Assembly: GCF_006345805.1 (NCBI RefSeq)
Contig: NC_043013.1
Location: 42,966,001-43,030,000, forward strand
Length of the DNA stretch: 64,000 bases
Direction: 5' to 3'
Source of the DNA: Octopus sinensis
Taxonomy: Eukaryota
This document shows, piece after piece, positions 841 through 54,445 of the stretch. Both the position numbers and the translations under genes were made by a program. The notes under the pieces were generated by a model. That model ran no database searches. It had not been told where the DNA came from and worked only from the letters and a program-made list of their open reading frames with translations. Every line of letters begins with the position of its first letter. Position 1 is the first letter of the stretch.

Positions 841-1654
841 GATATTAAAATTGGAAAAATCCACCTTGTTTATAAAAAGTTTTAACCTGGACTTGCACTC
901 TCCAAGCCACTGGACAGGCTTCTTTCAGTTTCTGTCTACCAAATTCACTCACAAGGCATTGATCAGCCTAGGGCTATAGTAGAAGACACTTGGAGCCCAA
1001 AACCATGTAGTTGCAAAGCAAGTTTCTTAATATATAAATCATTCTTAAAGACATCACCACAGTCTGTTGAGCATTATAAAAGCTGTTGTTTTTCACTGAC
1101 AATAAGTGTTTCACATATGCTGTGCTATGTTTGACTTCTCTTGCATACATCCCTATCAGGATATATATTATCCAATTTTGTCGACAAATGTCCATTGTAC
1201 TATCTACAGGAGCCTAAATAACTCAGATTCAGCACTGTCATATAGAGACATATGGACACACATTGTAAATCATACAAATCATTTTATACTCATTTCAATT
1301 GTGGTTTGAAATATTGTCTAGAATTCCTCATATTAGTTTCCTCGTAACCATTTTTATAAATATGGACATTCTGCTGAATATGAACCTTTTGTGATAGTTA
1401 GTTATTTTGTGATAGTTATTTTCTGTTAACTTTACCTTGTCTTTGTTACGAGGATGACACTAATAATGGAACACCCTTCCCATGTGATGAGTGGTATGTG
1501 CTTGTCATTACAAATACTGTGTAAGAAACCGAGTCATCAAGAAGTCAGTCAAAAATAGTCATGTCTTTACTTGTCTAACTATACTGCTATACTGGAGTGG
1601 ACATTATACAGTCCAATGTTGGATTACAAGTCTTCTAAAATGAAATTTATATAT

Positions 1655-2043
1655 AGGTGCAGGAGTGGCTGTGTGGTAAGTAGCTTGCTTATCAACCACA
1701 TAGTTCCGGGTTCAGTCCCACTGCGTGGCACCTTGGGCAAGTGTCCTCGGGCTGACCAAAGCCTTGTGAGTGGATTTGGTAGACGGAAACTGAAAGAAGC
1801 CCGTTGTATATATGTATATATATATATATATATATATGCGTGTGTGTCTGTGTTTGTCCCCCTAGCATTGCTTGACAACCGATGCTGGTGTGTTTATGTC
1901 CCCGTTACTTAGCAGTTCGGCAAAAGAAACTGATAGAATAAGTACTGGGCTTACAAAAGAATAAGTCCCGGGGTCGAGTTGCTCGATTAAAGGTGGTGCT
2001 CCAGCATGGCCGCAGTCAAATGACTGAAACAAGTAAAAGAGTA
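1655..2043 (+). mobile_element. tRNA-headed SINE, family 1, full-length copy
   Basis: GGAGTGGCTGTGTGGTAAG..GGTTCAGTCCCACTG A/B-box-like head, central (TA)/(TG) tract, GAAACAAGTAAAAGA tail; homologous copies at 917, 7181, 14612, 19640, 20845, 23380, 28560, 34860, 53990, 58355. Confidence 0.85.
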
Positions 2044-2278
2044 ATAGCTTCATAACATCATTTCATGTATGCATTTGTTTTCTTTACTTTGTTCTGTAAT
2101 TTTTTTATATTATGATGTAATTTCAAATTTCTTGTACTGTTTCGATTTGTTGAAATTAACAATTTTTTTGTAAGAATTACAAACCTTTTGATATATGAAT
2201 TACTCTCATTTTTATCTCTAGTCTACCTCTGCAACCATCATCTTCATTTATTTGTCCTTTCAGGATTTTGAAATTCCA

Positions 2279-3085
2279 ATGCCTACAGCTGAAATTCCTT
2301 ACACTCGCTCTATCAGTAGCTTGACCATTCCTCCTTTCTTCACCAATTACCCTGATCTCTGGTTTGTCCAGGTAGAGGCACTGTTCCTGATAAACGGTAT
2401 TACATGTGAGGCTACTCGCTTTGCATATATTGTTTCTTCACTCCCATATAATGTAATTCAGAAAGTACGTGATCTTCTTGTTGCACCTCCGAATTCTGTG
2501 AGTTACGCTACATTAAAGGAGGAGCTAATTAAACGCACCTCTATTTCTCAGGAGGAGCGCTTTAACCAGCTTCTTTTTGGGGAGAAACTTGAAGACCAAA
2601 AACCTTCCCAGCTTCTCCATCATATGCGGTACCTACTAGCTGACAACACCATGAGCAAAGAATTTTTTAAAGAGCTTTTTTTTGCAAAACTTCCTGCCAA
2701 AACTAAAATGATATTAGTAGTTTTTAAAAATCAACAGTCTGTTGAGAAACTCGCTGAAGTAGCTGATCGCATTGAAGAAATCACTTCCTCAGCGTCAACT
2801 GTGACTAAAGTGGCAACCAAGTTACCTGCCACAAGCTGTCTTTCACCATATAACTCAAAGCCTGAAAAAGAGGATTTGCAAAAGGAAGCACTTCCAATAC
2901 AAATCCAACCATTGGAGATAGACAGAGTAAAGTATAGAAGCAGTAGTGAATCTTCTTGTAGCTCCAGTTTGTCCAAATCTGTTGACTGGAAATGCTGGTA
3001 TCACAGGAAGTTTGGTAGCAATGCTCGCCACTGCGTCCAACCTTGTTCCTTCAGCCCAAAAAACAATACCAGGTATTATTGGTAA
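2279..3085 (+). CDS. Intact Ty3/gypsy-type Gag (capsid-like, DUF7041-type) ORF, 268 aa from ATG 2279; no pol
   Basis: IPPFFTNYPDLWFVQVEALF..GIT..TRFAYIVSSL..VRDLL..PP..YATLKEELIKRT, QLLFGEKLEDQKPSQLLHHMR, LFFAKLP, LAEVADRI and terminal CWYHRKFGSNARHCVQPC match the usual layout of this Gag family; polypyrimidine-CAG acceptor ends at 2263. Confidence 0.85.
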   Translation: MPTAEIPYTRSISSLTIPPFFTNYPDLWFVQVEALFLINGITCEATRFAYIVSSLPYNVIQKVRDLLVAPPNSVSYATLKEELIKRTSISQEERFNQLLFGEKLEDQKPSQLLHHMRYLLADNTMSKEFFKELFFAKLPAKTKMILVVFKNQQSVEKLAEVADRIEEITSSASTVTKVATKLPATSCLSPYNSKPEKEDLQKEALPIQIQPLEIDRVKYRSSSESSCSSSLSKSVDWKCWYHRKFGSNARHCVQPCSFSPKNNTRYYW

Positions 3086-3442
3086 TAGATTTACTTGGCC
3101 AGACCCCTTACAGCCTACTTAGCATTATAAAAGCCTTTTTTCAAAATTAAAAAAAAAATTTTTTTAACAGCCAGTATGTATTACATAGGTGCTGTACTCT
3201 TTTGATCTCTCTTACTCTTATAATTTCTATAAAGGCATAAACATCTGAGAAGAGCTGTCTAACATCCACACATGTCATTCAAGAATCAATGTTTTCACAT
3301 GGACTGATACTCTACTAAGTAATAAGCCCACTACCCTAGCCACTGGGTGTTGTGCTATGCCTTCATGAAAAAATTTTTTAATCCTATGAATATATGCACA
3401 CACCTAAATCATCTTTTAATGCTCATTTTTTTTTATTTGAAA

Positions 3443-3998
3443 TATGAGGGTTGGCTAAAACGTTCATAGACTGATCAAGATACTCTCATGTGATGTGATC
3501 AAATGAGGTTTATTTTTAGACATAGCACTTCTTGTGGGCCACACATTTCTTCTATTAGTATTGCAGTGCTTGGATCCCATTCATGAAGAAGCTTTCATCC
3601 TGCTGTTCAAAAGATCATTAACAACAAATATGTCATTATCACTGTAATACTGGTTCCTAACCAAGTGTTTTTCATATTAGAGAACAGATGAAAATCAGAT
3701 GGGACCATATGAGGAGAATAGGGAGGGTGTTCAACCAGTTCAAAGCCACAGTCATCTATTGTAGCCATTGAAACTAACGATTTGTATGCTGGAGCATTGT
3801 AACACCACGATGCCAAATTTTGTCCAAGAGAAGTCGCTACAAGTTACTTTGAAGTCTTCTTTGAACAGTCAGATGTCAGTTTTACCTGGAAAGGAACAAT
3901 GCAGCTATTACTAAGAGTTGAAGTGGATGTATGCAAGATTTCACACCTAGCATCACTCTTTCATAGTCAGCCTATGAACTTTTCAGCCCACTCTTGTA
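3443..3998 (-). mobile_element. Internally deleted mariner element
   Basis: Imperfect TIRs (TATGAGGGTTGGCTAAAACGTTCATAG / CTATGAACTTTTCAGCCCACTCTTGTA); remnant YNAPAY..FELVEHPPYSPHMVPSDFHLF (mariner YSPDLAPSDFHLF motif). Confidence 0.85.
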
Positions 3999-5520
3999 CT
4001 GTCAATAATTTTTCCTCAGTTATTCCATTAAGTTCCATGCACATTTTCATAAATACAAAACTTCTGATGAATATGGACTACATTTATTTTCTGATGTACA
4101 TTTATTTTTGTTACATTTTACATCACCATCATCTTGACATCCTATACTATATTTTTTAAATTTCTTCATAATAGAATTAAAAGAATTTTGCTATAAATTA
4201 TTATCATTGTTATCTCTTACTTCTCCATCTCTACAATCATCATTTTCATTTATTTATATTAAAAGTGATATTGCTCATGTAATGTTTATCATTTAGGACA
4301 TGAAAATAGAATATTGTTTTGTTGTATATGGTTGTGCTGCCACGAACCTCTTTATCCAAAGTGGTGGACTTGTCAGCCATGTGAAGACAGAATTACTACT
4401 TGCATCTGAAAGGACCAAGCAATTAAATCTAGTACATCTTGTGTGTCATCATCATTGTTTTGATGTCCATTTTTCATTGGCTAGGCGGAATTCATTGAGG
4501 TAGATTTTCTACTGCTTGATGCCTCTTAATGTCACCAACCTTCACCTGTTTCCGAATAAGGTAAAATTCCCTCTGGTCCTTCAAACATGAACAGCATAAT
4601 AGCTGGATATGCTTTCACAGAAGACTGCAAACAAATGACATAGTATGACAGTGATACTCATTTTACAACTGTCAGATAATATCAAGACAAAGAGATTCAA
4701 ACATATACTTACACACACATATATACAAACACTCAGGCCTATGATCAGCTTCTATTTGCTTCTGTCTAGGAAGCAAAGGAAATGACTACCATTCCCCTCA
4801 AACTTTGCTTTTGTAATCTGGTTATAAGTGTTTTGAAACTGACCTATTTTCCATTACATTTCAGACATTCAGCATTGAGTTGCTGAAGCAGAAATGTCAT
4901 TATAGCAAATATTCTGCTCAACACCACAGATTTGCTTGTCAGTTGCTTGACCATAATAACCTCTTGAGTATGTCTCTTAGTGGCTGACTATATGTGCATT
5001 TCTGTTCATGAGCAGGAGTAGCCATGTATTGAGAGGGATTCTTTGGGGGTTTGAATAGATTTAAGAAAAGCAAAGTTTGAAGGAAATATTAGCCATTTTT
5101 CATACTTTCAAGGGGCAGCAAATAGGAAATAAGTTACTATCCAAGGTTCAAAGGTCTTGTGGTACACAGTGTAATTATAGGCTCCAAAATGTGAATAAAA
5201 AATATAATAAAATATTGTAACAGAAAGTGTACAGTGACATTGTTGTGAGGAGTGGAGTAGTCAACAGTCCTTTTTCAGGGTTAAGATAATAGAAGAAAGC
5301 TGACAGTGTTTTATGTCTTCTCTACTTGAGTGATTGGCTGCAACTGATGCAACAAGGCATGAACTTGTATATATAGGCAGGAAGTAGTAGGTGAGAGCAA
5401 GAGATGGAAAGAGAAATTAAGAGGCAGAAAAGCAGGCCAAGGAGAGGTGAAGGGAAAAATCCAAGTAAGAGGGAAACTGAAGGATAAAAATGAACTGAAA
5501 GAGTGTAAGGGAGCAAAAAT

Positions 5521-6150
5521 ACATATATAGTATAATGCTTTGAATGTGTTCGTGAAAGCAATCAGCAAGCCAATGGCCCCTGTTTTCCCAATGTAAAAGA
5601 ATGCCATAAAGCTTGTAGATAATAGTTTATAAGGCTGAAAGATGAGTAGCAGAAGTTTGGAGTAAAGCAGTACTGTGACTTGGGCCCAGTGATGGCAGTA
5701 TCATTAGCACGCCAGGCAAAATTCTTAGCGACATACTATCCGTCATAACATCCTGAGTTCAAATTCCACCAAGGTTGACTTTACTTTTCATCCTTTTGGG
5801 GTCGATAAAATTAGTACCAATCAAGCACTGGGGTCAATGTAGGCATTTCATGATGATCATTTACAGGGGAAGAATTTAATAGATTGGCAGTATCAGTATA
5901 TGGCTGGCCTTTATTTTATTTTACGATTATGTAAAAACAATTATTTCATGCATTATTTAGGAATTTTGAGGTTTTTTTTTTAAACAATTCTCTTGTTATA
6001 TGGATTTCAAATTTAGGCACAAGGCCAACAATTTTAGGGGAGAGGTAATTTTATTACATCAATCCCAGTGTTCAACTGGTACTTATTTTATCAATCCCAA
6101 AAGGAGAAAAGGCAAAGTTGATGTAGGCTGAACTTGAACCTGGAGCATAA
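5521..6150. repeat. Block duplicated in inverted orientation at 46640-47339
   Basis: Reverse complement of 46640-47339 aligns over non-repeat sequence and two SINE pieces. Confidence 0.85.
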
Positions 6151-6430: not shown

Positions 6431-7180
6431 GAATATTGACAAGAGGTCCCCAAATCATGGAGTAAGTGTAAGAGAAGAAATTAGAAAACAAATTTATTTT
6501 AAATCAGTTGACAAACAAATAAGTACAATTCTTGAATTATTCTCAACAGGTTTGCCAGCAGGGATTTTTGGTGATCAGCACAACAGGCAAGGGGTTAAAT
6601 GATGTTCACAGAAGGACTGTAAACAATCTTACAAAACTTTGTGTAGCATACAAGGGGGTGCTGAAAAGTTTCTGGCTTTAAGGGTACCGTGAAAGACCTG
6701 GTGGGAAGCCCAACCTTCCAAGTTTTTTTACAGGGCTTAGAAAAACTGAAAGACTGCTGTATGTGTGTGTGCTTGCTACCTGACAATGAAGTCTTGGGTT
6801 CAGTTCCACTGCACAACACCTAAGAAAAGTATCTACTTTTATAGACCGGGCCTAAATTTGTTGACCTGATTTCGTTTCCTCTCATTGCTGAGGACGCATG
6901 GGTGTTGCTTTCACAATTGCAAGATCATGGTTTCAATTCCTGGACTGGGTGGTGAGTTGTGTTCTTGGGCAAAACACTTCGTTTCACAATGCTCTGCGAT
7001 CACTTCGACACTTGGCATGTGGTACACTTTTCATATGTTCAGGTAACGTCGATTTGATCACTGTAAACAACCTTTTACTCATTTCAGTCATTAGACTGTG
7101 GCCATGCTGGGGCACTGCCATGAAGGGTTTATTTTTAGTCGAACGAATCAACCACCAATATTTTTCTTTCTTTTTTTTTT

Positions 7181-7509
7181 AAGCCTGGCATTTATTCCAT
7201 TAGTTCCCTTTACCGAACGACTAAGTTACAGTGACAGAAACACAACACATTATCAAGGGTGGTAGGAGACAAACACAGACACACAAGGTGGGATTTTGGA
7301 TCAGGACACCCATATAAGTTGGATTTTCTTTGTTTTTACTCCACCACACATACATGACTTTTTTTCAGTTTCCGTCTACCAAATCCACTTCAAAGGATTT
7401 GGTCAGCCCAAGGCTATAGTAGAAGACACTTGCCCAAGGTGCCGTGCAGTGGGACTGAACCCAAAACCGTGTTGTCGGGAAGCAAGCTTCTTGTCACACA
7501 GCCACACGT
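7181..7509 (-). mobile_element. SINE family 1 copy
   Basis: Reverse complement of the 1655-2043 consensus. Confidence 0.8.
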
Positions 7510-8594: not shown

Positions 8595-8892
8595 TATTGT
8601 ATTTAAACTTCAAATCACAACACACTGCGTAACACGACAATGAACCTTCGTGACTCGCTGACTGTGACGCTGTTGGCGCCGAGGAAACGCCGTCTGGGAA
8701 GTTGTCTAAGGGAGACAACTTCGTGAATCCGGGTAATTTTAACGAACAGACGAGATTTTGTTGGAACTGAATTTGATGTGTCGCCATTAAATCAGTGACA
8801 GCAATTCTTAAGAAGGTGTTTTGTTTTGTGTGGTTTTTAAAAATTTTCTTGACAATCACAAACAATACATAGATATATTATATTCATATATG

Positions 8893-9027
8893 ATGGCTAA
8901 TGCTAATGGAGAAATATCTAGTGAGAAATTAATAGATCTAAGGGTTGTGGATCTCCGTAATGAACTGGAAAAACGTGGACTCGATAAAAGTGGAGTGAAG
9001 GCCGTATTGTTGGAACGTCTTGAACAG
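8893..9027 (+). CDS. SAFB: SAFB-A exon 1 (SAP domain)
   Basis: [45 protein letters not shown]|GTAGGA; an in-frame ATG also lies at 8890. Confidence 0.95.
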
Positions 9028-12000: not shown

Positions 12001-15000
12001 TGGGAAGGTATTGAGAATGATAGCAGATAAGAAGTGTTTAGAATGGAGTAAAGCAGGAGTGAGAAAAGGTAGTGGCTGAAGGCGCAGAAGGGTAGTGATT
12101 GGTTGAAATAATGTGGGCAGGGATGATGAGGAATGGAAGTGGTTTGGGTGGGAGGGGGCTGTCTGGGATATAAAATGTACCATGTTACTTGGAGATGAAT
12201 ACCTTAGTTGCGTGGTACCATAGATTTAGAGGGAGGAATGCTTGATTTGTTGGGGAGAAAGGAGGGGGACAGTCTCGCAGTTACAAGCATATGAGTGTGT
12301 TTTTTTAGGATTCTCATTAAATATAAACATGTAAAATTACCTCCTGTGGACTCCTAAAGCTTTATTTACCACCAAGGGTCAAATTGGACCACTTTGAGAA
12401 GCCCTGACCTAATTAGTTCTCTCCCATTTCCTCTATAGTTATTAAAAGCAGCTTTGTTTTGCATTTGATTTGTAAAATTCTGTGATTCTGTAGATGTGAA
12501 TTGTGCTGGGAGTTCCAAGTGGAGAAAATAAGTCTTGAGACATTGAGAGGTGATGTGAGCACAAACAAAGAAAAAACTAAATGATAATGCAATAATTTAT
12601 TAATTACTTTTAAAGGGTGCTGTTTCTATACACTAACTCTTTAGCTCTTGCATATTCCAATGATATTCATTCTATATCATGTATAGCTTTTACAATGTGT
12701 TGATTGTAAAATTGGGGTTTTAATTGAGAGAATATTCCACTGTCATAAAAAATTTTATAAAGATTTTTAGTAGAAAACAGATTTTTCTTTGGCATATTAC
12801 TCCAATGACCATACCAAAACTGAGACATTGGAGAAAAACCTGGTTCTATGGCCTGTTGAATCCATGGTAACATGTAATGGGAATATGAAATGATGATACT
12901 GTAACAATTTGCTTGAGCAGAAAAAGTGCAGTCAAGACATAGCATGCATTGGGTCATCCCATAAATAATGCAGTTATGTTCAATTGCATGACCTAAAAGT
13001 TGGAGGGGGACAGAATAAACTACCTGCATCAACTTGCTATAAAAGCAGGTAGTAATTTTATCTTGTACTTATTCTTAGTGCTAGTTTTGAAGAGTGTGGT
13101 TCGATTTGAACAACTATTTTTTCAAAGCTATAATGGAAGTGACAAAGGAGCATATTTGGTGTATTTCACTTTATGAGTTCAATAGAGGCAACAATGCAAC
13201 AGAAAGTGCAAGGAATATTAATGCAGTATATGGGGATCGGACAATAAGCATAAGCCAGTATCAATGGTGGTTCCAGAAATTCCAAGCTAGAAATTACACT
13301 CTAGAAGATGAGCTTCATCCTGGAAGATCTGTAGAGTTCAACGAGGACGTCCTGCAAACCCTGGTGGAACAAAATCCCATTGTAACTGTTGAGGAACTAG
13401 CAGAAAAGCTTGAATTTGGTCATTCAACCATTTATCGACACCTGCATGCCATCAGAAAAGTCAGCAAATTGGGTCAGTGGGTTCCTCACAAACTTTCTGA
13501 ATTTAAAATTTTGTGCAGAGTGTGAATGTGTGCTCTTCTTTGCTGTCATGTCTCACGAATGAACCTTTTTTGGACTGTAAAAGTGTCAGGCGCTGAAAAC
13601 AGTGGGTAGGGAAAGGAGAAACACTGGAACCCCAGGCTAAAGAAGGTCTTAATCCATCTAAGGTGTTGTTATCTGTTTGGTGGGATGTGAAAGGTTTAGT
13701 CCATTTTGAACTTTTAAACTCAAACCAAAGGAGATCTACTGCAAGCAGCTTGAGCAGCTTAAATCAGTGGCAGAAGGAAAATGACCATCTTTGGTTTCAA
13801 GACGAAAAGTGTTCTTCCATCAGTATAATACTCGGTGACATACAAAGAGGATGACATTCCAAAGGCTGGAGCAGTTTGAATGGGAAGCGATGCTCCACCC
13901 ACATTGCCCCTGCTTATTATTATTTATTCCACAGTCTTCAAAATCCTTTGGGTGGAAAAAATATGAATTCTGTAGACAAGGTCAGAACAGTATTGGGGGA
14001 GTATTTTTTGTCACAGACAAGTGAATTTTGGAAGAGGAGCCTTGCAAGTCTACCAGATAGATAGAAGAGCATTGTGGAAAATGAAGGAGAGTATATTTTA
14101 GATTAAAAAAGAATTTTGTTTATCTTAATTTTGAAAAATAAAAGAAGTATAAAAAAACCCACATTATTTATAGGATGACCCAATACATTCACTTTTCCAT
14201 ATAGATAGAAAATGTTAAAAGTATATGAAGAAAGTTTGGTCTTCCATTATAATAATTTGTCATTCTTTTATTTTGCTGTTTGTGACAATTGGTTGATTTA
14301 TATATAATATAACATGATATAATGTGTGTTTATGTGTGTATATAGACAATAAATTTTTGTCTGATTGCAACAGTTGGTGCTCTTGCAGAATACTTGCATA
14401 AAATTCAGCATCTATTACTTCTGCAGCTGTCTGCCAGTAATGTTTTATATATTTATATAGCCCTTTCACTTGACATATCATTCAAAAGTAAACAAAAATG
14501 TTGTTGACTTAAAATCGATTCCAGGAGATAAAACTTATGTGTGAAATTCGGTTTGGTTCCTGCTGATTAAATTACTGTGACATCTGCGTAGGGTTATTTT
14601 ATTTCTTTCATATAGGCACAGGAGTGGCTGTGTGGTAAGTAGCTTGCTTACCAATCGCATGGCTCCAGGTTCAGTCCCACTGTGTGGCACCTTGGACAAG
14701 TGTCTTCTACTATAGCCTCGGGCTGACCATAGCTTTGTAAGTGGATTTAGTAGATGGAAACTGAAAGAAGCCCATTGTATATATATATATATATATATGT
14801 GTGTGTTTGTGTGTCTGTGTGTCCCCCCACCATTGCTTGCCAACAAATGTTGGTGTGTTTACGTCCCTGTAACTTCTCGGTTCAGCAAAAGAGACCCACT
14901 AGGCTTACAAAGAATTAATTATAGGGTAAAAGCAGTGTAATGTTACAGTGAATTTGAGTGCCATATTTATTCATAAATAATGCCTACTTAACTCTTAACT

Positions 15001-18900: not shown

Positions 18901-21900
18901 AGCATCCATTTTCCATGTTGACATGGGTTAAACAGTTTGACTAGAACTAGAATAGAGAGCTGCACCAGGTTCCAGTCTATTTTGGTTTGGTTTCTATGGT
19001 TGGATAGAATGTACTGGGTGTCTTATGTGTCACCAGCATGGGTGCCCTTAACATGTCACCAGCAAGGATGCCTTTAACATGTCACTGGCATGGGTAACTT
19101 CTACATGTCACTTATCATGGGTGCTTATAACGTGTCACTTGCACTGGTGCATTTATTGTGTCACCAACATAGGTGCCTTTAATATATCACTGACACTGGT
19201 GCCTTTAATGTGCCACTAACATGGGTGCCTTTAATGTGTCACCAGCATGGGTGCCTTTAACATGTCACCAATGTGGGTGCCTTTAATGAGTCACCAGTAT
19301 GGGTGCCTTTAACATGTCACCAAAGTGGGTGCCTTTGACGTGTCATTAACATGAGTGCCTTTTTATGTGTCACCAAGACAGGTGCATTTTATGTGTCACT
19401 CATTGACAAAAATATAGGATATGGTAAACTGTGCTTTGAAACCCTTCCTGCCTATGTCATCATTTAACATCCACTTTTCCATGCTTGTATAGATCAGATG
19501 GAATTTATTGAGGTAGATTTTCTATGTCCAGATGCCTTTCCAAGCAATATAATATTTCCCATGGCCACACTTGGTTTCTGTCGAAGACTGAGAACAAACA
19601 ACATTGCTTCTATGATGGCAATGCTTGTTTACAACCATCAAGGGATGACAAATCAAGGGTTCGATACACGTGCATGCACAGACAAACATATATCTATACA
19701 CCAGGCTTCTTTCAGTTTCCTTCTTGTAAATCCATTCAAAGGCTTTTGATTGGCCCAAAGCTTGTAGTAGAAGACATTTGCTGATGGTGCTGTGCAGGAG
19801 GACTGAACCTGAGACCACACGGTTGGGAAGCAAGCTTCTCAACCACACAGCCATAACTGCACATATGTTAACAGGATAATTAATCCTAAAACAGCAACTT
19901 GTTTTGTGGTGTTATGACTATCTAATATACAATTGAATATGTTATAGTGGTGTATTTACCTCAATGTTATATCTGGCCTTGCAGTGTTAAACTATTTTAC
20001 TTTGTGTTCAGATGTGTGATACACTATTTTGTCATGTAATGATACACGTAACTGATTAATATCTCTGAGCTAATTATATTAATTATATTAATTTCCAGAA
20101 AATAAATCAACTGCAGACATGGATGAGGTTGGTGAAGTTTGTGATCTTTTTTTATGAATTAGTTAATTTCTTCTGTTTATCTTCCATTTGTTAGTAATTA
20201 GTAATTAGAATGTCATCTGTTGGTAGTGGTGCTTATCATTTATTTCATTGTTTGTCATAAGAAGTAGATGACTTACTTTGTCATGGTGCCAAAAATATAA
20301 AAGCTACTTTCTGAGTTATAACACTCTTATTTGGAGACGTGTTTGACTGTTCAGGAGGCTGGTGAGATTTGAGTAATCATAAACTGTAACATAGGTTCAA
20401 CTCACAGTAGTGGATGGATCTGGTTTACCCATGGCTCATTACCTGAAATTAAAGTATTCAGTGACAATGACATATGATATATTTTCCATTTTCTTTGTGT
20501 TATTTGGTGAAAGTTGTTGTGGTGGCCTAGATTCACTATATATATATCACTATTTCACTTCCTGTTTCATGGTTGTCAATTCTCAGTATTGTCAATTACT
20601 TATCTCCTGCAAAATGGGGTTTCTCTGAATGATCTCTGGAGTAATGTTGCTCAACTGGATGTGCTGTTTGGAGATCAGGGAATCTCTCCAGGTTGACGGC
20701 TGCTTCTCTGCATTGGGAGGTCACAGCTCTGGACATGGGATTAGAATGTCACAGGAAAGAATCACAAGACTCATTCCTGAAGCTGAGCCAACCAGCAGGA
20801 GGCCTAAGGGGGTGGACCGAGAATGACATGGTTGGATAATATCCAGGTGCAGACGTGGCTGTGTGATAAGAGGCTTGCTTCCCACTGCATGGCACTTTGG
20901 GCATATGTCTTCTATTATGGCCTCAGGCTAACCAAAGCCTTGTGAGTGGATTTGGTAGATGGAAACTAAAAGAAGCCCATCATGTGTATATGTATGTGTG
21001 TGTGTGTGTGTTTGATCCCCACCACTGTTTGACAACCGGTGTGTCCATGTTCCCATAACCTAGTAGTTCTGCAAAAGAGATTGATAGAATAAGTACTAGG
21101 CTTTAAAAAAAATAAACACTGGGGTCAATTCATTTGACTAAAAATTCTTCAAGCCAGTGCCCCAGCATGGCCACAGTCTAATGACTAAAACAAGTAAAAG
21201 ATAGTCTCAGTTGGCTGTGCTTAGGGATCCAACCAGAAGATGTTGCTTTTGATAGGACCCTGTGGAGGAGGTACCTGAGGACTCTAACCCCATGATCCTA
21301 CCAGGAATAATGAGTAGAGATGAATGTATGGATGGTCAATTACTTATGATGGTGTTATCTGAATGGCAACTTTGACCCATTCATCAATGAAATGTTTTCA
21401 TTGATGAAGATAGCTGTGAATTTAAGTTGGTAGATTTTAGGTACAATGTGAAATACAATTAAGAGACATTATTTACATTGCACGGATATGTGTCCTCATC
21501 TGATTTACTCTCCAGCCTTCATCAGGTGTCCTAGTAGAATTTTGAACCCAACCTTGGGTTTGCATTCCTAAGGTTTTTTTTTTGCTGATATTATTATCAT
21601 TATTCAAGGCACTGCCTGAAATTGAACTCGGAATCTTGAGCTTAGTAGCCTGTGCTCTTTGCTATATGCCTGTGGGCAATTATAGAGTGAATTTTATATT
21701 AAAAAAAAATACCTTAGGAATGAGAACCCAGGGCTGGGTTCAAAATTGTACCAGGACACCTGATGATGGCTGGAGAGTAAATCAGCTGAAACATTGTGGT
21801 AACAACAAACAGGATGAGGACACATATTCATCCAATGTAAATAATATACAGAATTCTTCATCTCTAAAATATAGAACAGAATATAGAAGAGACATGATAA

Positions 21901-27900: not shown

Positions 27901-30900
27901 GAAGGATTTCCTGAGTAATGTTACTTGACAAGGTGCATAGCTTGGATGTCTGCCTAGGTCATGCTGCTACTTCTCCCTATTGAGAGTCACAGCTTTGGTT
28001 CTATGGATATGTAATTAGTAGGTTGTAGAAAGGAATTGCAAAATGATTCTTCAAGCCAAGCCAACCAATGGGAGTCCAAGGCATAGACGGTAAATGTGAT
28101 GGTTGGCTAAGTCTCAGCTAGTCACACTTGGGAATCCAGCCAGAAAGGGATACTGATAGTTGCAGATGCCTGAGGACTCTACTCCCCTAACCCTCCCAGG
28201 AATAGTGAGTGAAGAAGATGGATATATGAAGCACAACAACTGAGATGTTAGTTATCTGAACAACTGATGACTTGATCATGGGTTTTAAATCTTGCCACAG
28301 CTATTTTATTGTTTCTCTGATCAATTACGAGCTATTGCATAAGTGGTGTGCATTATCATTTTTACACCAAGTTTTTCTACATTGACATAGATTGGATGTG
28401 ATTTACTGAAGTAATTTTCTATGGCCAGGTGCCTTTCCTTTTGCCACCCTTTACTTGTTTTACAAGTAAAATATGTTTTATCTTCTTAGATCTCACAGTT
28501 TTATAACTGCCAGGTTACAACACATCATTTGCAGTAAAACATCACAGTTGCTCAAGCATTGACTCTGTGAAGACACATGGTTCACACACATGCACAAATA
28601 TATACATGTACATGTGTATATTCGAGAGAAGTAGAGTGTGTATGTGTGGATATATATATATATTGGATTTTTGTACAGTTTCCATCAACCAAGGCCATAG
28701 AAGACATTTGCTCAAGATGCCATGCCATGATGAGGAATGGAAGACAAAATCAGGCATTTACTAAGTGAACTTTATAACCACACAGCCATTCCTTTACCTG
28801 TAAATGTCCAAATTGACCAATGCCACTCACAATAGCATGAGAAAATGCTGTAATACAAGCACATATATGAGTGTGATAATTTTAGTATATTGTACAAGAT
28901 TATATCCAGATCCATGTTTATTTTCTGTGAGCCCATAGTTTTGTCCAATGTTTTGTATTTCTGCTATGCTTTGAATGTGTGCTGAGTGCAATACCGTTGA
29001 AGACATATGGAATGAAAATTTGACACAAGTTTGTATGTGAAGTATAATTATTATCCGTATTTTAGCTGTAGTGCTTATATAGTCCATTGATCTTGTAGGA
29101 TTACTAGACCAAAAGCTTTTATTAGTAATGTTTTCTTTCTTTATTTCTTTATTTTCTATTTAAACTCTCAACACAGCACAGTCTGTTGTGGAGTGAGGTT
29201 TAACAAGTTTTCATTTCGTATCAACTATTTCATTCTAAATTAACTTTCTGTAGCATTGCCAGAACAGTCATCTTCATCTGCAGAGACGAATACAAAAGAA
29301 GAAAAGAGTGAAATGTCCACATCAACAGAGAATAACACAAAAGAAGAAGACAGTAAAATGTCCTTGTCAGCAGAGAATAATACAAAAGAAAAAAGAAACA
29401 GTGAAATGTCTTCATCCACAGAGAATAACTCAAAAGAAGAAAATAGCGAAAAATCATCCTCATCAGCCAGTGTGAAAAGCACAACATCACAGAAATGTAA
29501 TGAAATTAAAGGAGATAAGGTGGCCAAAACAGCTGTCTCGGAAAGTTTACCTTCAACACCAAGAGTTAAACGTAAAGCACCATTTGCATTAAAAGACACA
29601 GTCAGTATGGACACTTCCAACACTCAACAGGGTGAAGAAAATGAATCACTGATTGTACATGTTGATGATACACAGAATGATTTAGATGCTGATCTTGTGG
29701 CATCAAAGGACAAAGTGCGTGGCAAAACTGAAGCGAAGAAAACAGATGGAAGCAAAGTTGAAGAAAGGGCTAAAGGTAAAACAGAAGGAGGGCAAACTGA
29801 GAAGAAGGCTGATGAAAAGAAAGATGATAAAGATGTAAAGTCGAAGAGGTTGGTTTTCATGTCGTCTTTCCCACTGCTTTGATTCAAAGATGTCATTAGT
29901 TAAATGATCTTACTTCTCGGTAACAGATGTTGACATCTTGACTGCAACTGGGGTCTACAACTGCCAATGGGAACAGATTTTCTTAAACCTTAAGTTAACC
30001 TGTTTAAGTAGGTTTTCTTCAAAGAACATCCTCTCATGGCTAATCGTGAGTTATTTTAAAACAGAATATGTGAGTGTTTGTGTGTGTGTGGTTTGGTTGT
30101 TAGATTCAGGTTCAAACTACTAATTATAATAATGGTAGATATTTTCCTAGTCTTCTTCATAAAACAGGAAAATCTACTGTAAAGATTGTTCTGTGGAAAA
30201 CTCTTATTCACATCTTAGCCTGGGTTATAATTGACCAAAACCTATTTGACATAACTTTTCATTAGTTTCTGATATCTGAAACAAAAATGAAAGAATTAAA
30301 AACCCATATTTTCTCCTGGGTTGTCTGCTACAGCCTCATAAGAGATTATTATAGTATGAGTGTTTAAGTTGAGATGTGATGGATGATACCAATGAAGATT
30401 ATTGTTAGATAATGTTGCGCTGCTTATATTAGGAAATATTCATTATCTTTTAGATGGTTATTGTGAGCTATAGTTCATGAAATAAAAAGGGGCCAGCAAA
30501 TGGTTTAGGGGGTCGGCTGGGGTTCAGGAATCTCAATTGGAATGTTATTAATTACATGTGCTCAATCTCAGACATTAGGAGATTAACCAAATTGCTGAAG
30601 TATTATCCATGGGAACAGATTAACCAATGTCAAGAAGCAAAAATGTCTGTTTGGATGAAGATGGCAACAACAATTGAAGCAGATGAAGAGGAGGGATCCT
30701 GAGTTTTCAAGACTAAAAAGACACAACTTTACGGATGTTAGATAATTAATAATTTTTCTGCCAAAATACAAACTGGAAGATGCTTGGAAAGCCTGGTTCC
30801 TGTATTCCAGCCATGTTCCTGCTAAATTAGCAGTTAATGTTTAGGGAATTCCACATTGCTTGCTGACCTCTTTTTAGCTTCATGAAGACTATAGTTCTTG

Positions 30901-33900: not shown

Positions 33901-36900
33901 CTTCTGTCTTTCTGTCTCACTCTAACCTTCCATCACCTGACACAAGATCACCTTTCCAATGCCCTGTCCTCTTTCAAAGATTCCTTGTCTTGCAAAGTTA
34001 CTTGGTGACCCTGCCAGTGCAGGTGTCACTTAAAAAGCACCCAGTCCACACTGTAAAGTGGTCGGCATTTGGAAGGGCATCCAGCTGTAAAAAACCATGC
34101 CAAAACAGACAGAGAAGCATGGTGCAGGCTCCTACCTGGCCAACTCTTGTCAAACCGTCCAACCCATGCCGGTCTGAAGGGGATGTTAAATGATGATATA
34201 AATCACATAGCTTTCTACACACACACACACATATATATATAAAATATCACACATTTTTAAACCATCAGCATTATTGATGATAATTGTCTAACTAGCTTAT
34301 TTATTTACTTTATTTACATTGTTCAGAGTGACATGGGAATGTCTGTACAACCTGAGCAAATAATTGCCAAAAATCTTTGTTTGAATCTACTGATTTATTG
34401 GTTTTCTTACCAATGTACATCAATGAATGATATACATGTACTCATCTATATGAAGAGCTTCCACACAATTTCTGTCAACCAAATTTTACCTACATGGCAT
34501 TGATCATCCTGCAGCTATGGTGGAGTACAATTTCCCTAGATGTCATAGATTGAAAGCAAACCTGGATTTAGGAGTTTCAGAAGCATACTTGTCCATGCAG
34601 CCATGCTAAATATCTGCTGAAAACATTTAATGTTCTTAACCTATAGTAACCTTCTTGCTTCTAAGCATGGGTCAGGTGGAGTTTATTGAGGCTGATTTAT
34701 GGCCTGATGCATCTTTCTGTTGCCAACCCTCATCTGATTCCAGTGAAAGTAATATTTCTTCATGGCTAGACATTTTTTGACATAATATTGGAAGTTAATG
34801 ATACTATTTATTTGGAAGTGACACTTGTTCATAACTATTATACAATGTCAAGACAAGGAGAGACACAAAGAAACACTCACACAGACATATGCACATATAT
34901 ACCACAGACTTCCTTCAGTTTCTCTCTATCAAATGCATTACAAGGCCTTTGTAGATTTGGGGCTATAGTAGAAGACTGTCATCCAAAGTGCTATGCTGTG
35001 GGACTGAACCTGTAACCATGTGGTTGGGAAGCCCTCTGTATTGGCAGTGTTGATAAGTATTGAATACATATCAAAGTAAATTTTCAAGTATAAACTTTTA
35101 AATTAAAAAAAATTTAATTTTGCTTTTGTTTTTGTCTACATCAGGTTGTTGGTGCCAAAGTAGTGACAAATGCACGAAGCCCTGGTGCTCGATGTTATGG
35201 TTTTGTAACTATGTCTTCTTCACATGAAGCTACTAAATGTATTCAACATTTGAATCAGACTGAACTGCATGGCCGTATGATATCCGTTGAAAGGGTGAGT
35301 TATCCCAAGTTCATTGTTTTGTCTATAGACCAGGTTGTCAGATAGTCATTAAGTGTATGGTTGCACTGAAATTAATCTGTTTTGTGATTGTAAACTGGTG
35401 CAAACACACACACTCGAAGGTAATATGTGGAGCAGAGTGCTTGCATTAGTAGTGGAATGTTGTTGATTCATAGTTGGTATTAGAATCAAGAAGGAACAGA
35501 GCTGTGATGCATATGAAGGAAGCAGAAAGTGCTTCATTAGGGATGTAACAGATGCCTGTGAGAGAAGGTTTGAAACTGAGAGCAAAGAATAAACCCTTAG
35601 TGAATAATAAAACAATATTGTTATTGCATAGTTTGGGTGACTTACAGCTGCACATGGTTTGATGGCAACAAGGATAATGGAAGAAAGATGTTATGCTACA
35701 GTGAGGGCAATAAACCAAGATTTTTCTGGAAGCATCAGTGCTGCTTGGTACCTCTGAAAGGACTGATATGTATGTAAACTATAGATATGTTTCAATAAAC
35801 TACTTCTGTATGAGTAGTGTGTGGTGGATATATATATATATATATGTGTATGTATTTAAATGATAAACACAGAGGCGATGACAAGTGAACAAGACCTTTG
35901 ACAATTTGCTGTGCTTGAGAAGACGTATCAAGCCAAGTGAAATTGTAGTCGTGGTCAGTGCCGGTGAGATGTAAAAGGCACCAGTGCCGGTGCCACATTA
36001 AAAGCACCTGCTAAAATCTTGGAGTGGTTAGCGTTAGTAAGGGCATCCAACTGTAGAAAATATGACAAATGAGACTGGAGCCTGTTGCAGCTCTCTGGCT
36101 TACCAGTCCCAGTCAGACCCATGCCAGCATTTAAAATGGACACTAAATGATGATGATGATGATGATGATGAAGCATAATGTACTGTTGTAGATGTTGTTC
36201 GGTGGCACCAGTCATGATCAAAGAAACATGTTGGGTGTAGGTGGTTGATTGAGTTATTGGATATGATCCATAGATCCAGCACTCTTTGTATACCTACCAT
36301 TCTTCTGTCTGGGTGATGATCACATTGACATTGTGATTTGTAGAAGTTTATTGTATGAGGTGTGTTGTAGCAGTTTACGTATCATCGTTTTTACACCAAT
36401 TTTTCCATATTGACATCAGTTAGGTAGGAATCCTAGCATCTTGCTACTCGTTTCAGTCCTTCGTCATTTTGGACCAGCAGCAATACTCAAGACTGCTTGC
36501 ATTACTATTGTGTTAGTCATGTTTAGTTTTTAGTGTGGCCTTAATAGCAAGTCATCCTTTCTGTCACCAACCACTTTACAGTGTAGCGCAGGTGCATTTA
36601 TCATGCCACTGGAAATTAAGAACTTCTCTGTGTCAATTCTTACTCGTCATTTCTTTTCAAGACAGGTTGTTTTTGCTACAGATTGTGGTATCTGTACCTT
36701 TCTTTTATGCAGACGTGGGCCAAGTGAACTCCTCTTTTTTATCTCTAGTATTTGAAACTTACAAGGTTTTCTTTTTAAGGTTCTTTGCCAATCAAGGTTG
36801 ACCTTTTTATTTTGTGTGTTGTCCACACATGCATGTTTTCACTTTCCATATCACCAATGTTATGGTAAGGAGAAAAAAAAAAACACCGTTTTTGAGGACA

Positions 36901-42587: not shown

Positions 42588-42622
<35 letters not shown>

Positions 42623-44934: not shown

Positions 44935-45317
44935 ACCTTCCCCCTCTTTAGTTCTGATAGTGATTCAGCAATAAGAACAAGGTCATCAGCATAGAGGAGC
45001 TCCTAAGGGCATCCAGTTTTAAGTTCTGTTATGGCCTGGAGGACTATGATAAACAAGAGAGGGCTGAGAAGTGATCCTTGGTGAACTCCTACCTGTACAC
45101 TCAGTTCCTTGCTATATTCATTGCTGACTTTCACCTTACTGACAGCATCCCTGTACATGGCTTGTACAGCTTTCACCAACCACTTATCTATCTGTAGCTT
45201 CCATATAGCCCAGCAGATAAGGGAGCAGGGGACCCTGTCAATGGCTTTCTCCATGTCTACAAAAGCCAAGTACAGAGGTTTATTTTTGGCTAAATACTTC
45301 TTCTGAAATTGCCTCAT
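44935..45317 (-). mobile_element. RTE-clade LINE reverse-transcriptase fragment
   Basis: LYLAFVDMEKAIDRVP..VQVGVHQGSLLSPLLFIIVL..ELLYADDLVL. Confidence 0.9.
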
Positions 45318-53900: not shown

Positions 53901-54390
53901 GAAATCAGGTGCAGTTCCATGTCATTTATTTTGGTTATGGTTATTTTGTTTCTTTTGGTTTTATATCAATGTGTGTGTGTGTGTGTGTGTGTGCAGGCAT
54001 GGCTGTATACATAAGATGCTTGCTTTGCAACCATGTGATTTCAGATTCATCCTTGTTGCAGGACACCTTTGGTAAGTGTCCTCTACTAGAAGTCCAAGCT
54101 GTCCAAAAGTCCCAGACTTAGAGAAAATAATCACTGGGGTAGAGTTGTTCAGCTAAAACCTTCATGGCAGTACCTGAGCATAGCCTTAGTCCAGTGACTG
54201 GAACAAGTAAAAGATGAAAGAATATATATATATACTTTATTTAAAGCAGCAGAAAATTCAACAAAACCTGTTACTCTGAGTTTCCCGGGTTTTGTTGAAT
54301 TTTCTGCTGCTTTAAATAAAGCATATTACTCTACCACTGGTATTTGAGTACTCTTTTTTCCACCTTGTTTCACATTTATGTGTTTACTCC

Positions 54391-54445
<55 letters not shown>

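What the first reader, a model, noticed from the sequence alone, without database searches (positions are those of the whole stretch)
2240..3150. Isolated, intact Gag capsid ORF with a splice acceptor and no pol: candidate domesticated (Arc/PEG10-like) gene in an octopus
Seen: a 268-aa Ty3/gypsy-type Gag with no stops or frameshifts, while every other transposon ORF in the window (at least 10) is broken. It is preceded by a U-rich intron-like tract and a TTTGTCCTTTCAG acceptor 15 nt before the ATG. No protease, RT or integrase follows, and there is no LTR pair. Established: Ty3/gypsy gags have been domesticated repeatedly as capsid-forming host genes (Arc independently in tetrapods and flies; PEG10, RTL, PNMA). 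Inference: this may be the coding exon of a cephalopod RNA-packaging capsid gene. A recently truncated insertion is the alternative.
Basis: partly seen in the sequence, partly recalled or inferred. Interest (0 to 1): 0.75.

Follow-up and report, generated by a model that had tools for sequence, protein, structure and literature searches.

The report
Lone intact retrotransposon capsid gene
A complete, unbroken capsid (gag) gene from a CsRn1-type Ty3/gypsy retrotransposon sits alone, without its enzyme genes, about 5.8 kb upstream of a SAFB-like gene. The sequence around it hints, but does not prove, that the host has kept it as a gene of its own.

Summary
The ORF is real: ATG 2279 to TAA 3085 on the + strand, 268 aa, and the longest ORF in the 64 kb. 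It is a Gag of the CsRn1 clade of Ty3/gypsy elements. It has Pfam DUF7041, a confidently modelled two-lobed helical domain whose best fold matches are Arc, Ty3, PNMA2, PEG10 and HIV capsids, and the clade's CX2HX9CX3C "CHCC" knuckle. It ends where stand-alone relatives end. No protease, RT or integrase homology exists anywhere in the window; at most 13 in-frame codons after a double stop resemble the start of protease.

The claim of "no LTR pair" needs amending. The ORF lies between two decayed, colinear direct repeats, 1059-2263 and 3110-4265. These are about 75% identical in the blocks that align, and each is interrupted by a different transposon. They lack a TG..CA end pair, a primer-binding site and a polypurine tract. 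The "intron-like" U-rich tract is part of that repeat. The acceptor-like motif at 2263|2264 is rare (10 in 128 kb) but untested.

If the repeats arose together with gag, the open frame has outlived neutral decay, which implies selection. Orthology, dN/dS, copy number and transcription could not be tested. I put co-option at about 0.45 and a neutral, younger remnant at about 0.4.

The parts
2279..3085 (+). Complete gag ORF: 268 codons plus TAA
   Evidence: It aligns end to end with stand-alone Gag proteins of 260-350 aa. It keeps 34 of the 36 columns that are at least 90% conserved among 67 relatives.
2327..2575 (+). DUF7041 domain (aa 17-99), the N-terminal lobe of the capsid-like region
   Evidence: Pfam PF23055, E=1.3e-24, 86.8 bits against a cut-off of 28.
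2351..2788 (+). Two-lobed all-helical capsid-like domain (aa 25-170, nine helices)
   Evidence: AlphaFold model with block pLDDT of 86-97 over aa 11-170. The top Foldseek PDB matches are dArc1, HIV CA, Arc, PNMA2, Ty3 capsid and PEG10 CA-CTD. Single-lobe TM-scores are 0.68-0.74, but no match has E<0.001.
2993..3046 (+). CHCC zinc knuckle CWYHRKFGSNARHCVQPC (CX2HX9CX3C), aa 239-256
   Evidence: Read directly from the sequence. The same pattern is present in 140 of 154 relatives. PMC2582038 describes it as the signature of CsRn1-clade Gag.
3083..3088 (+). Two consecutive in-frame stop codons (TAA TAG) at the natural end of gag
   Evidence: The ORF has 12 residues after the knuckle; the family median is 11.
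3089..3127 (+). Possible vestige of the first codons of pol/protease (IYLARPLTAYLAL), in frame with gag
   Evidence: It weakly resembles the RL[FY][VI]xDxxTG..FLIDSG motif of gag-pol relatives, at the same spacing from the knuckle. This is only suggestive.
2244..2263 (+). Acceptor-like motif: pyrimidine tract plus CAG|G, ending 15 nt before the ATG, in phase 0 with the ORF
   Evidence: Motifs this strong occur 10 times in 128 kb of both strands. Only 0.4% of positions have one within 40 nt upstream. Its use in splicing is untested.
1059..1144 (+). Repeat block a1, the start of upstream repeat X1
   Evidence: About 74% identical to 3110-3215. The local score is 24 against 13.1 +/- 1.4 for shuffles, and 1.5% of random window pairs reach it. 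It contains a conserved AGCATTATAAAAGC.
2083..2263 (+). Repeat block b1, the end of X1, which abuts the ORF and contains the U-rich tract
   Evidence: 66-78% identical to 4083-4265. The score is 42 against 16.2 +/- 2.4 for shuffles, and 0 of 400 random pairs reach it.
3110..3215 (+). Repeat block a2, the start of downstream repeat X2, beginning 24 nt after the first stop codon
   Evidence: It carries a 21-nt A/T-run insertion relative to a1.
4083..4265 (+). Repeat block b2, the end of X2; no gag follows it
   Evidence: No gag relic is found in 4266-5600.
1649..2040 (+). SINE-like repeat inserted in X1 and absent from X2
   Evidence: Other copies lie at 14610-14895, 20839-21201 and 7072-7505(-). 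A star-tree estimate gives about 0.09 substitutions per site for this copy.
3441..4050 (-). Mariner-type transposon fragment inserted in X2 and absent from X1
   Evidence: Broken minus-strand ORFs include ...HPPYSPHMVPSDFHLF.... A TIR-like GGTTGGCTAAAACG lies at about 3445. I recognised it from the motif; Pfam gave no hit on the 68-aa piece.
8890..9027 (+). First coding exon of the neighbouring SAFB-like gene (SAP domain), with a CAG|GT donor at 9027|9028
   Evidence: Pfam SAP, E=1.7e-10; sequence. A CpG-containing stretch at about 8620-8740 (read by eye, not quantified; the window GC is only 0.38-0.42) may mark its promoter.

Best explanation
The ORF is the complete gag gene of a CsRn1-clade Ty3/gypsy (Metaviridae) retrotransposon. 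It encodes a two-lobed capsid (CA) domain, a 68-residue linker and a CHCC zinc knuckle. These are the parts such elements use to assemble particles and bind their RNA.

The rest of the element is gone. The sequence is cut a few codons after the gag stop. There is no primer-binding site, polypurine tract, protease, RT or integrase.

The gag fragment sits exactly between two old, colinear direct repeats (X1 and X2). These have diverged by about 25% or more, and each has since been invaded by a different transposon.

My preferred reading is that the X-gag-X unit arose in one event long ago. On that reading, the gag frame has been held open by purifying selection while everything around it decayed. 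That would make it a co-opted, or at least constrained, capsid-type gene lying head-to-tail upstream of SAFB, possibly entered through the acceptor at 2263|2264.

Shown: the identity, completeness, fold class, isolation and flanking repeats.
Inferred: the common origin of the repeats and gag, the age, and selection.
Not shown at all: expression, splicing, capsid formation or any host function.
For: Identity:
- DUF7041 match.
- Exact CX2HX9CX3C motif, described as the CsRn1-clade signature in PMC2582038.
- DUF7041-bearing polyproteins have Ty3/gypsy pol domains.
- The fold matches are capsid-like.

Completeness:
- The ORF aligns over aa 9-261 with 260-300-aa relatives.
- It retains 34 of 36 highly conserved columns, the same as the family mean.
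- It ends 12 aa after the knuckle, against a median of 11.

Isolation: there is no pol homology anywhere in the window.

Old flanks:
- Blocks a and b are significant against both shuffled and real-sequence nulls. They are colinear, with offsets of 2000-2070 nt.
- The boundaries of the repeats coincide with the ends of the gag fragment. Block b1 ends no more than 15 nt before the ATG, and block a2 starts 24 nt after the stop.
- X1 carries a SINE and X2 carries a mariner fragment.

Neutral expectation:
- The probability of having no stop codon, from substitutions alone, is 0.047 at d=0.09 and 0.006 at d=0.15. Indels would lower it further.
- By my own arithmetic (not a tool run), losing only 2 of 36 conserved residues caps any neutral period at roughly d<0.04.

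Acceptor motif: it is rare, with only 0.4% of positions having one this strong within 40 nt upstream.
Against: - No orthologue, dN/dS value, copy count or transcript could be examined.
- The exact protein is not among about 15 billion collected proteins. No representative exceeds 45% identity. So it is not an annotated gene in any proteome that the collection holds, although the coverage of cephalopods is unknown.
- The age argument fails if X1 and X2 are independent copies of a dispersed repeat, or of two diverged elements, rather than products of one event at this locus.
- The SINE age may be inflated by subfamily structure. O. vulgaris has hundreds of SINE families (PMC13282606).
- CsRn1-clade elements are common in cephalopods (PMC6238403), and 147 recent Ty3-like insertions are reported in O. 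vulgaris (PMC13282606). A young fragment is therefore plausible.
- The acceptor motif was noticed post hoc, and its tract is inherited from a T-rich repeat.
- The N-terminus is short (16 aa before PPFF, against a median of 29). The linker is unusually poor in arginine (2 against a median of 8). Either could reflect drift.
Confidence: 0.45

Rival explanations
1. Neutral remnant. This is a fairly recent copy of a CsRn1-clade element that lost its LTRs and pol through deletions or rearrangement. It has simply not yet had time to acquire a stop or a frameshift. The flanking repeats are unrelated to its age, being two copies of a dispersed repeat or the 5' regions of two diverged elements. The acceptor-like motif is chance.
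For: - CsRn1-clade elements are widespread in cephalopods (PMC6238403).
- Ty3-like families have been recently active in O. vulgaris (PMC13282606).
- Relatives elsewhere are multi-copy, stand-alone gag ORFs of the same length. One example is six copies at 90% identity or more on different Antedon chromosomes.
- The ORF looks exactly like an active family member, as a young copy would.
- It is not in the protein collection.
- The first-stage reader picked this ORF because it is intact, which is a selection bias.
Against: - It needs two deletions that spare the ORF to within 15 nt and 24-45 nt of its ends.
- It also needs the coincidence that colinear copies of the same repeat abut both ends of the gag fragment.
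- No sister copy at 50% identity or more appears among 1.84 billion representative proteins. This is unexpected for a recently active family if cephalopod assemblies are covered.
- There is no tRNA-Trp primer-binding site in either repeat. This argues against the repeats being the element's own LTR and leader.
- The possible pol vestige looks decayed at its conserved residues while gag does not, though this evidence is weak.
Confidence: 0.4
2. Gag-only non-autonomous LTR element, resembling the TR-GAG elements that I recall, from memory, having been described in plants. On this reading X1 and X2 are its LTRs, the internal region holds only gag, and the element was moved in trans by autonomous relatives.
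For: Direct repeats flank a gag-only internal region. A TATA-like AGCATTATAAAAGC is conserved in both a blocks.
Against: - The repeats have no TG..CA termini.
- There is no TGG-initiated primer-binding site between 2254 and 2300, and no purine tract before 3110.
- A target-site duplication cannot be defined.
- LTRs are identical at insertion, so about 25% divergence would make the copy old. An intact ORF would then still need selection.
- No other copy is present in the window.
Confidence: 0.08
3. Chance ORF or assembly artefact, with no biological unit at all.
For: None found.
Against: There are 8181 homologues at E<=0.001 and 379 at E<=1e-30. The domain, the motif and the fold are all as in the family.
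Confidence: 0.01

Closest known systems
Gag of CsRn1-clade Ty3/gypsy LTR retrotransposons (CsRn1, PwRn1, AgCR elements, Kabuki)
   Same: It has the CX2HX9CX3C 'CHCC' knuckle near the C-terminus and a helix-rich Gag of about 270 aa. The stop lies where family members with separate gag and pol ORFs in the same frame have theirs. The family's relatives are joined to PR-RT-RH-IN pol.
   Different: There is no LTR with recognisable termini, no tRNA-Trp primer-binding site and no pol at this locus. The N-terminus is shorter and the linker is poorer in arginine than in 67 relatives. The nearest relatives found are only 38-41% identical; those that carry names are echinoderms and arachnids.
Co-opted Ty3/gypsy gag genes: Arc and dArc1, PEG10/RTL, PNMA, Drosophila Gagr, beetle Crtg1
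   Same: It is an isolated, intact gag ORF with pol lost. The predicted CA fold has two lobes, and its best structural matches are these very proteins. It lies beside an ordinary host gene.
   Different: It comes from a different gypsy lineage. There is no sequence match to any PDB chain and no Arc, PNMA or Retrotrans_gag Pfam hit. The two criteria that define co-option, synteny across taxa and selection (PMC8321522), are untested. No CsRn1-clade or cephalopod case turned up in the papers searched.
Gag-derived restriction factors (mouse Fv1, sheep enJS56A1, yeast Ty1 p22 and the domesticated Ty1' gag)
   Same: These are gag-only coding units retained after the rest of the element was lost. They act by interfering with particles of related elements. 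That is a plausible role here, given how abundant CsRn1-clade elements are in cephalopods.
   Different: There is no functional evidence here. The comparison rests on general knowledge and on titles and abstracts seen (PMC10951436, 10.1101/741611).

Membership tests
CsRn1-clade Ty3/gypsy Gag | CHCC signature CX2HX9CX3C in the C-terminal region of Gag | tested here: met
   CWYHRKFGSNARHCVQPC at aa 239-256. The definition is taken from PMC2582038. 140 of 154 relatives share the pattern.
CsRn1-clade Ty3/gypsy Gag | The Gag family is linked to a Ty3/gypsy-order pol (PR-RT-RH-IN) | tested here: met
   Long DUF7041 proteins carry RVT_1, RT_RNaseH, RT_RNaseH_2, rve and Integrase_H2C2. Sources name several of them Ty3-G or 297-like. 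No BEL/Pao domains appear.
CsRn1-clade Ty3/gypsy Gag | Helix-rich, capsid-like fold | tested here: met
   The model has nine helices in two lobes, with pLDDT of 86-97 over aa 11-170. Capsid proteins dominate the Foldseek list, with single-lobe TM of 0.68-0.74, but all E-values are above 0.1.
CsRn1-clade Ty3/gypsy Gag | Element-level marks: LTRs, tRNA-Trp primer-binding site, 4-bp target-site duplication | tested here: not met
   No tRNA-Trp-like site occurs in 1000-2300 or 3080-4320. The flanking repeats lack TG..CA ends. A target duplication cannot be defined. The gene is of this family, but the locus is not an element.
CsRn1-clade Ty3/gypsy Gag | Phylogenetic placement with reference CsRn1, Kabuki or PwRn1 sequences | not tested
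   No reference sequences could be handed to the tools. RT, which is normally used for clade assignment, is absent here.
Co-opted (domesticated) gag gene, by the criteria of PMC8321522 | Shared synteny across species of at least two families, or a gene tree that follows the host tree | not testable with these tools
The metagenome scans were empty.
Co-opted (domesticated) gag gene, by the criteria of PMC8321522 | Evidence of purifying selection | tested here: inconclusive
   The evidence is indirect only. The ORF is intact and keeps 34 of 36 conserved columns, while the flanks are about 25% diverged and a neutral frame would rarely survive that long. The argument depends on the repeats and gag sharing one origin.
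Co-opted (domesticated) gag gene, by the criteria of PMC8321522 | Loss of the element's other parts, with gag kept intact | tested here: met
   No pol homology in 64 kb and no functional LTR, PBS or PPT.
Co-opted (domesticated) gag gene, by the criteria of PMC8321522 | Transcribed (here: spliced at 2263|2264) and translated | not testable with these tools
   No RNA data are available. The exact protein is absent from the protein collection. This counts mildly against an annotated gene.
Arc / PNMA / PEG10-RTL families proper | Sequence membership (Pfam Arc, PNMA or Retrotrans_gag, or a match to solved chains) | tested here: not met
   Only DUF7041 is found. There are no phmmer hits to PDB chains at E<=10. 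The resemblance is in fold and in kind, not in family.
TR-GAG-type non-autonomous LTR element | LTR pair with PBS and PPT around a gag-only internal region, present in several copies | tested here: inconclusive
   A direct-repeat pair is present, but no PBS or PPT was found. Copy number is not testable.

The most novel reading that the evidence does not exclude
The ORF is a cephalopod host gene derived from a CsRn1-clade Gag. It would be the first co-opted 'CHCC' capsid gene and the first reported in a mollusc. On this reading it has been maintained for tens of millions of years upstream of SAFB, and is expressed through a captured splice acceptor. Its protein would either form Arc-like particles or restrict the abundant CsRn1-type elements.
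Probability: 0.4. Interest if true: 0.75.

Novelty: new member of a known kind. Interest (0 to 1): 0.5.

Why it matters
Capsid genes taken over from Ty3/gypsy elements (Arc, PEG10, PNMA) carry RNA between cells and are tied to synaptic plasticity and placentation. All well-supported animal cases come from vertebrates and insects, and from other gypsy lineages.

A conserved, expressed capsid gene in an octopus would be an independent capture from a different clade, with an unusual zinc knuckle, in the invertebrate lineage with the most complex nervous system. That would make convergent use of capsids directly testable.

If it proves to be only a young fragment, it is an ordinary piece of a transposon family already known to be common in cephalopods.

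Tried and rejected
1. My first recollection was that DUF7041 plus the C-terminal knuckle marks BEL/Pao Gag. I rejected this because the long relatives carry gypsy-type pol domains and no BEL/Pao domains, and the motif is the published CsRn1 signature.
2. Pol displaced elsewhere in the window by nested insertions. I found none, even at E<=5. The weak Integrase_H2C2 ORF at 52766-53278(-) does not match the pol of these relatives.
3. A true LTR pair. The repeats exist but have no TG..CA ends, no PBS and no PPT.
4. A tandem duplication of a whole X+gag unit. There is no gag relic after X2 or before X1.
5. A LINE-mediated retrocopy of a gag mRNA. There is no poly(A) at the end of the fragment; the A10 run at 3149-3158 lies inside block a2. 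There is no convincing target duplication, only AT-rich 8-10-mers.
6. Relatives in JGI metagenomes, by protein and by a 26-nt exact pattern. Nothing was found. The 68-sequence alignment was too variable for that tool.
8. Profile search with the search for homologous proteins. Only 12 hits passed the word filter, and no cephalopod names appeared.
9. tRNA and tandem-repeat scans found nothing relevant.
Full report
OBSERVATION

An uninterrupted reading frame runs on the + strand from ATG 2279 to TAA 3085, 268 codons, and is followed at once by a second stop, TAG 3086-3088. It is the longest ORF in the 64 kb in any frame. The next longest, at 208 aa, is an exon-like ORF of the neighbouring gene. 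The string TTTGTCCTTTCAG ends at 2263, 15 nt before the ATG, and an exon starting at 2264 would be in phase with the ORF. The 223 nt upstream are 49% T.

WHAT THE PROTEIN IS

- Pfam gives one family, DUF7041, over aa 17-99 (E=1.3e-24, 86.8 bits).
- A full HMMER scan of 1.84 billion representative proteins finds 8181 relatives at E<=0.001. Most are stand-alone proteins of 260-350 aa that align with the query end to end. The best is only 41% identical over a comparably full-length match; a few shorter partial hits reach 45%.
- The relatives that carry names are echinoderm and arachnid 'uncharacterized' or 'DUF7041 domain-containing' proteins. They are often multi-copy within a genome.
- I first recalled this architecture as BEL/Pao, and testing showed that was wrong. 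Proteins of more than 1000 aa that begin with a related DUF7041 region carry RVT_1, RT_RNaseH, RT_RNaseH_2, rve and Integrase_H2C2. Their sources name them Ty3-G or 297-like polyproteins.
- The C-terminal CWYHRKFGSNARHCVQPC fits CX2HX9CX3C exactly. PMC2582038 describes that pattern as the unique 'CHCC' signature of Gag in the CsRn1 clade of Ty3/gypsy elements. The same paper notes that members express gag and pol as one fused ORF, as two ORFs in the same frame, or by -1 frameshift.
- 140 of 154 relatives have the exact pattern. They end a median of 11 residues after it; this ORF ends 12 residues after it.

STRUCTURE

- An AlphaFold model built on a 68-sequence alignment has mean pLDDT 79, with block values of 86-97 over aa 11-170. 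It shows nine helices in two lobes, then a disordered linker and the knuckle.
- Foldseek against the PDB gives no match below E=0.1. Even so, the top of the list is almost entirely retroelement capsids: dArc1, HIV-1 CA, rat and human Arc, PNMA2, Ty3 and PEG10. One lobe superposes on the Arc, dArc1 and PEG10 C-lobes at TM 0.68-0.74 and rmsd 2.4-3.0 A.
- The viral library gives caulimovirid coat proteins, retroviral Gag and a metavirus ORF1, again weakly.
- There is no sequence-level match to any solved chain.
- In short, it works like a CA-NC Gag but is not a member of the Arc, PNMA or RTL families.

STATE OF THE ORF

- At columns conserved in at least 90% of 67 relatives, it keeps 34 of 36 residues. 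That equals the family mean of 94.5%. At the 70% and 50% thresholds it is slightly below average but within range.
- It differs in two ways. Its N-terminus is short, 16 aa before the PPFF motif against a median of 29. Its linker has 2 arginines against a median of 8, lower than all 67 relatives, although the total of basic residues is normal.

WHAT IS AND IS NOT AROUND IT

- tblastn with nine gag-pol relatives hits only 2276-3112 at E<=0.01. Loosening the threshold to E<=5 adds only scattered chance-level matches (best E=0.77). So no protease, RT, RNase H or integrase of this lineage lies anywhere in the window.
- The 13 in-frame codons after the double stop (IYLARPLTAYLAL, 3089-3127) resemble the start of protease in relatives (RL[FY][VI]xDxxTG..FLIDSG) at the same spacing from the knuckle. 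This is weak. If it is real, the element was of the same-frame gag-stop-pol type and is cut about 9-13 codons into pol.
- Upstream, 1649-2040 is a SINE-like repeat with several diverged copies in the window.
- Downstream, about 3441-4050 on the minus strand is a broken mariner-type transposase.
- A SAFB-like gene runs on the same strand. A SAP-domain exon lies at 8890-9027 (Pfam E=1.7e-10) with a CAG|GT donor. It is preceded at about 8620-8740 by a stretch in which CpG dinucleotides stand out by eye; I did not quantify this. Further exon-like ORFs lie at 29.3, 38.6, 41.3 and 42.8 kb.
- The gag ORF therefore lies about 5.8 kb upstream of that gene's first coding exon, most likely outside it.

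THE FLANKING REPEATS

- Two colinear blocks recur on both sides of the ORF. Block a1 (1059-1144) matches a2 (3110-3215) at about 74% identity, with a 21-nt A/T-run insertion in a2. Block b1 (2083-2263) matches b2 (4083-4265) at 66-78% identity.
- Block b scores 42 against 16.2 +/- 2.4 for shuffles, and 0 of 400 random pairs of real window segments reach it. Block a scores 24 against 13.1 +/- 1.4, and 1.5% of random real pairs reach it.
- The layout is a1...[SINE]...b1 - gag - a2...[mariner]...b2.
- The sequence between the blocks no longer aligns. No gag relic follows b2 or precedes a1, and no third copy exists in the window.
- The repeats end within 15 nt of the ATG and start 24 nt after the first stop.
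- They are LTR-like in arrangement only. They lack TG..CA ends. There is no TGG-initiated primer-binding site after b1, no tRNA-Trp-like site anywhere in either repeat, and no purine tract before a2.
Its paralogue at 4051-4265 is also 45% T but lacks the CAG acceptor.

HOW STRONG IS THE SPLICE ACCEPTOR?

Sites with at least 15 of 18 pyrimidines followed by CAG|G occur 10 times in 128 kb of both strands. Only 0.4% of positions have one within 40 nt upstream. With any YAG the figure is 2%, and with a looser tract it is 9%. The motif is therefore uncommon. It was, however, noticed after the fact, it lies in a T-rich repeat, and its use is untested.

AGE AND SELECTION (INFERENCE)

- In simulated neutral substitution of this ORF, the chance of remaining free of stops is 0.48 at 0.02 substitutions per site, 0.16 at 0.05, 0.047 at 0.09 and 0.006 at 0.15. 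Indels would lower all of these.
- By my own arithmetic (not a tool run), keeping 34 of 36 conserved residues limits any neutral period to roughly d<0.04.
- The two repeats differ by about 25% in their best blocks, which is about 0.15 per lineage after correction. The SINE inside X1 is about 0.09 from its source by a star-tree fit to six window copies.
- On the O. vulgaris scale in PMC13282606 (JC 0.09 is about 25 My, 0.2 is about 56 My), these correspond to tens of millions of years.
- If X-gag-X arose in one event, the ORF is that old, and chance survival is very unlikely. Candidate events are a duplication with the gag fragment at the junction, or an LTR-like structure. This is the main argument for selection.
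- The argument fails in two cases. One is if the two repeats are independent copies of a dispersed family or of two diverged elements. The other is if the SINE divergence reflects subfamily differences, since hundreds of SINE families are reported in O. vulgaris.

WEIGHING

For a neutral, younger remnant:
- CsRn1-clade elements are 'very well represented in cephalopods' (PMC6238403).
- Nine Ty3-like families with 147 recent insertions are reported in O. vulgaris.
- The ORF was flagged because it is intact.
- Neither the exact protein nor any relative at 50% identity or more is in the collections searched. I cannot tell whether those collections hold cephalopod proteomes.

For co-option:
- The fragment is trimmed almost exactly to the ORF.
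- The same repeat abuts both ends.
- The flanks are decayed and invaded by transposons while the ORF is pristine.
- The acceptor motif is rare.
- No sister copies are seen.

I put co-option or constraint at about 0.45, a neutral young remnant at about 0.40, and a gag-only non-autonomous LTR element at about 0.08.

COMPARISON WITH WHAT IS KNOWN

- As a sequence, it is a new and rather divergent member of a known Gag family (CsRn1 clade).
- As a possible host gene, it would belong to a known kind (Arc, dArc1, PEG10/RTL, PNMA, Gagr, Crtg1) but come from a lineage and a phylum with no reported case. A survey of 2,011 eukaryotic proteomes lists none in molluscs (PMC8321522). My literature searches found nothing on octopus gag-like genes.
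- The two criteria used in that survey, synteny and selection, are exactly what could not be tested here.

LIMITS

- No cephalopod DNA or RNA was available, and the species of the window could not be verified.

Noticed in passing
window 8620-9027, 29256-29882, 38575-38925, 41257-41640, 42829-43119 (+): A SAFB-like gene on the + strand. Its parts are a stretch in which CpG dinucleotides stand out by eye (possible promoter, not quantified), a first coding exon with a SAP domain ([35 protein letters not shown]...), a Ser/Glu-rich exon-like ORF with an internal repeat (...STENNTKEE...), an Arg/Glu-rich piece and a Gly/Asn/Met-rich piece. The exons were not joined into a model.
   Followed up: partly
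window 1649-2040, 7072-7505(-), 14610-14895, 20839-21201, 19688-19866(-), 34887-35032(-), fragment 914-1029: A SINE-like family with at least seven copies or fragments in 64 kb, 66-87% identical pairwise. Each copy has an internal (TA)n or (TG)n microsatellite. ARAGORN finds no tRNA-like head in any of them.
   Followed up: partly
window 13094-13525 (+) and about 3441-4050 (-): Two separate mariner/Mos1-type transposase fragments. The first is an N-terminal HTH_48 piece (Pfam E=3e-17). The second is a broken C-terminal piece with ...YSPHMVPSDFHLF.... Neither is near full length.
   Followed up: partly
window 45003-45317 (-): A 104-aa fragment of a non-LTR-type reverse transcriptase (RVT_1, E=3.6e-8), inside or just beyond the SAFB-like gene.
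   Followed up: no
window 52065-53278 (-): A 170-aa ORF with a weak Integrase_H2C2 match (E=0.0025, below the Pfam cut-off). It is not matched by the pol of the DUF7041-type gypsy relatives, so it is probably a relic of a different LTR element.
   Followed up: partly
window 48968-49342 (-) and 50453-50791 (+): ORFs with repeated ...[14 protein letters not shown]... units in inverted orientation about 1.2 kb apart. They point to an inverted duplication or a foldback-type repeat.
   Followed up: no
window 1071-1084 and 3122-3135: A perfectly conserved 14-nt AGCATTATAAAAGC (TATA-like) in both a blocks, which are otherwise about 74% identical. It might be a promoter element of the repeat.
   Followed up: no
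window 54390-54445 and 42587-42618: (TA)n-type microsatellites that cross-match the TA run inside the SINE at 1807-1837.
   Followed up: no
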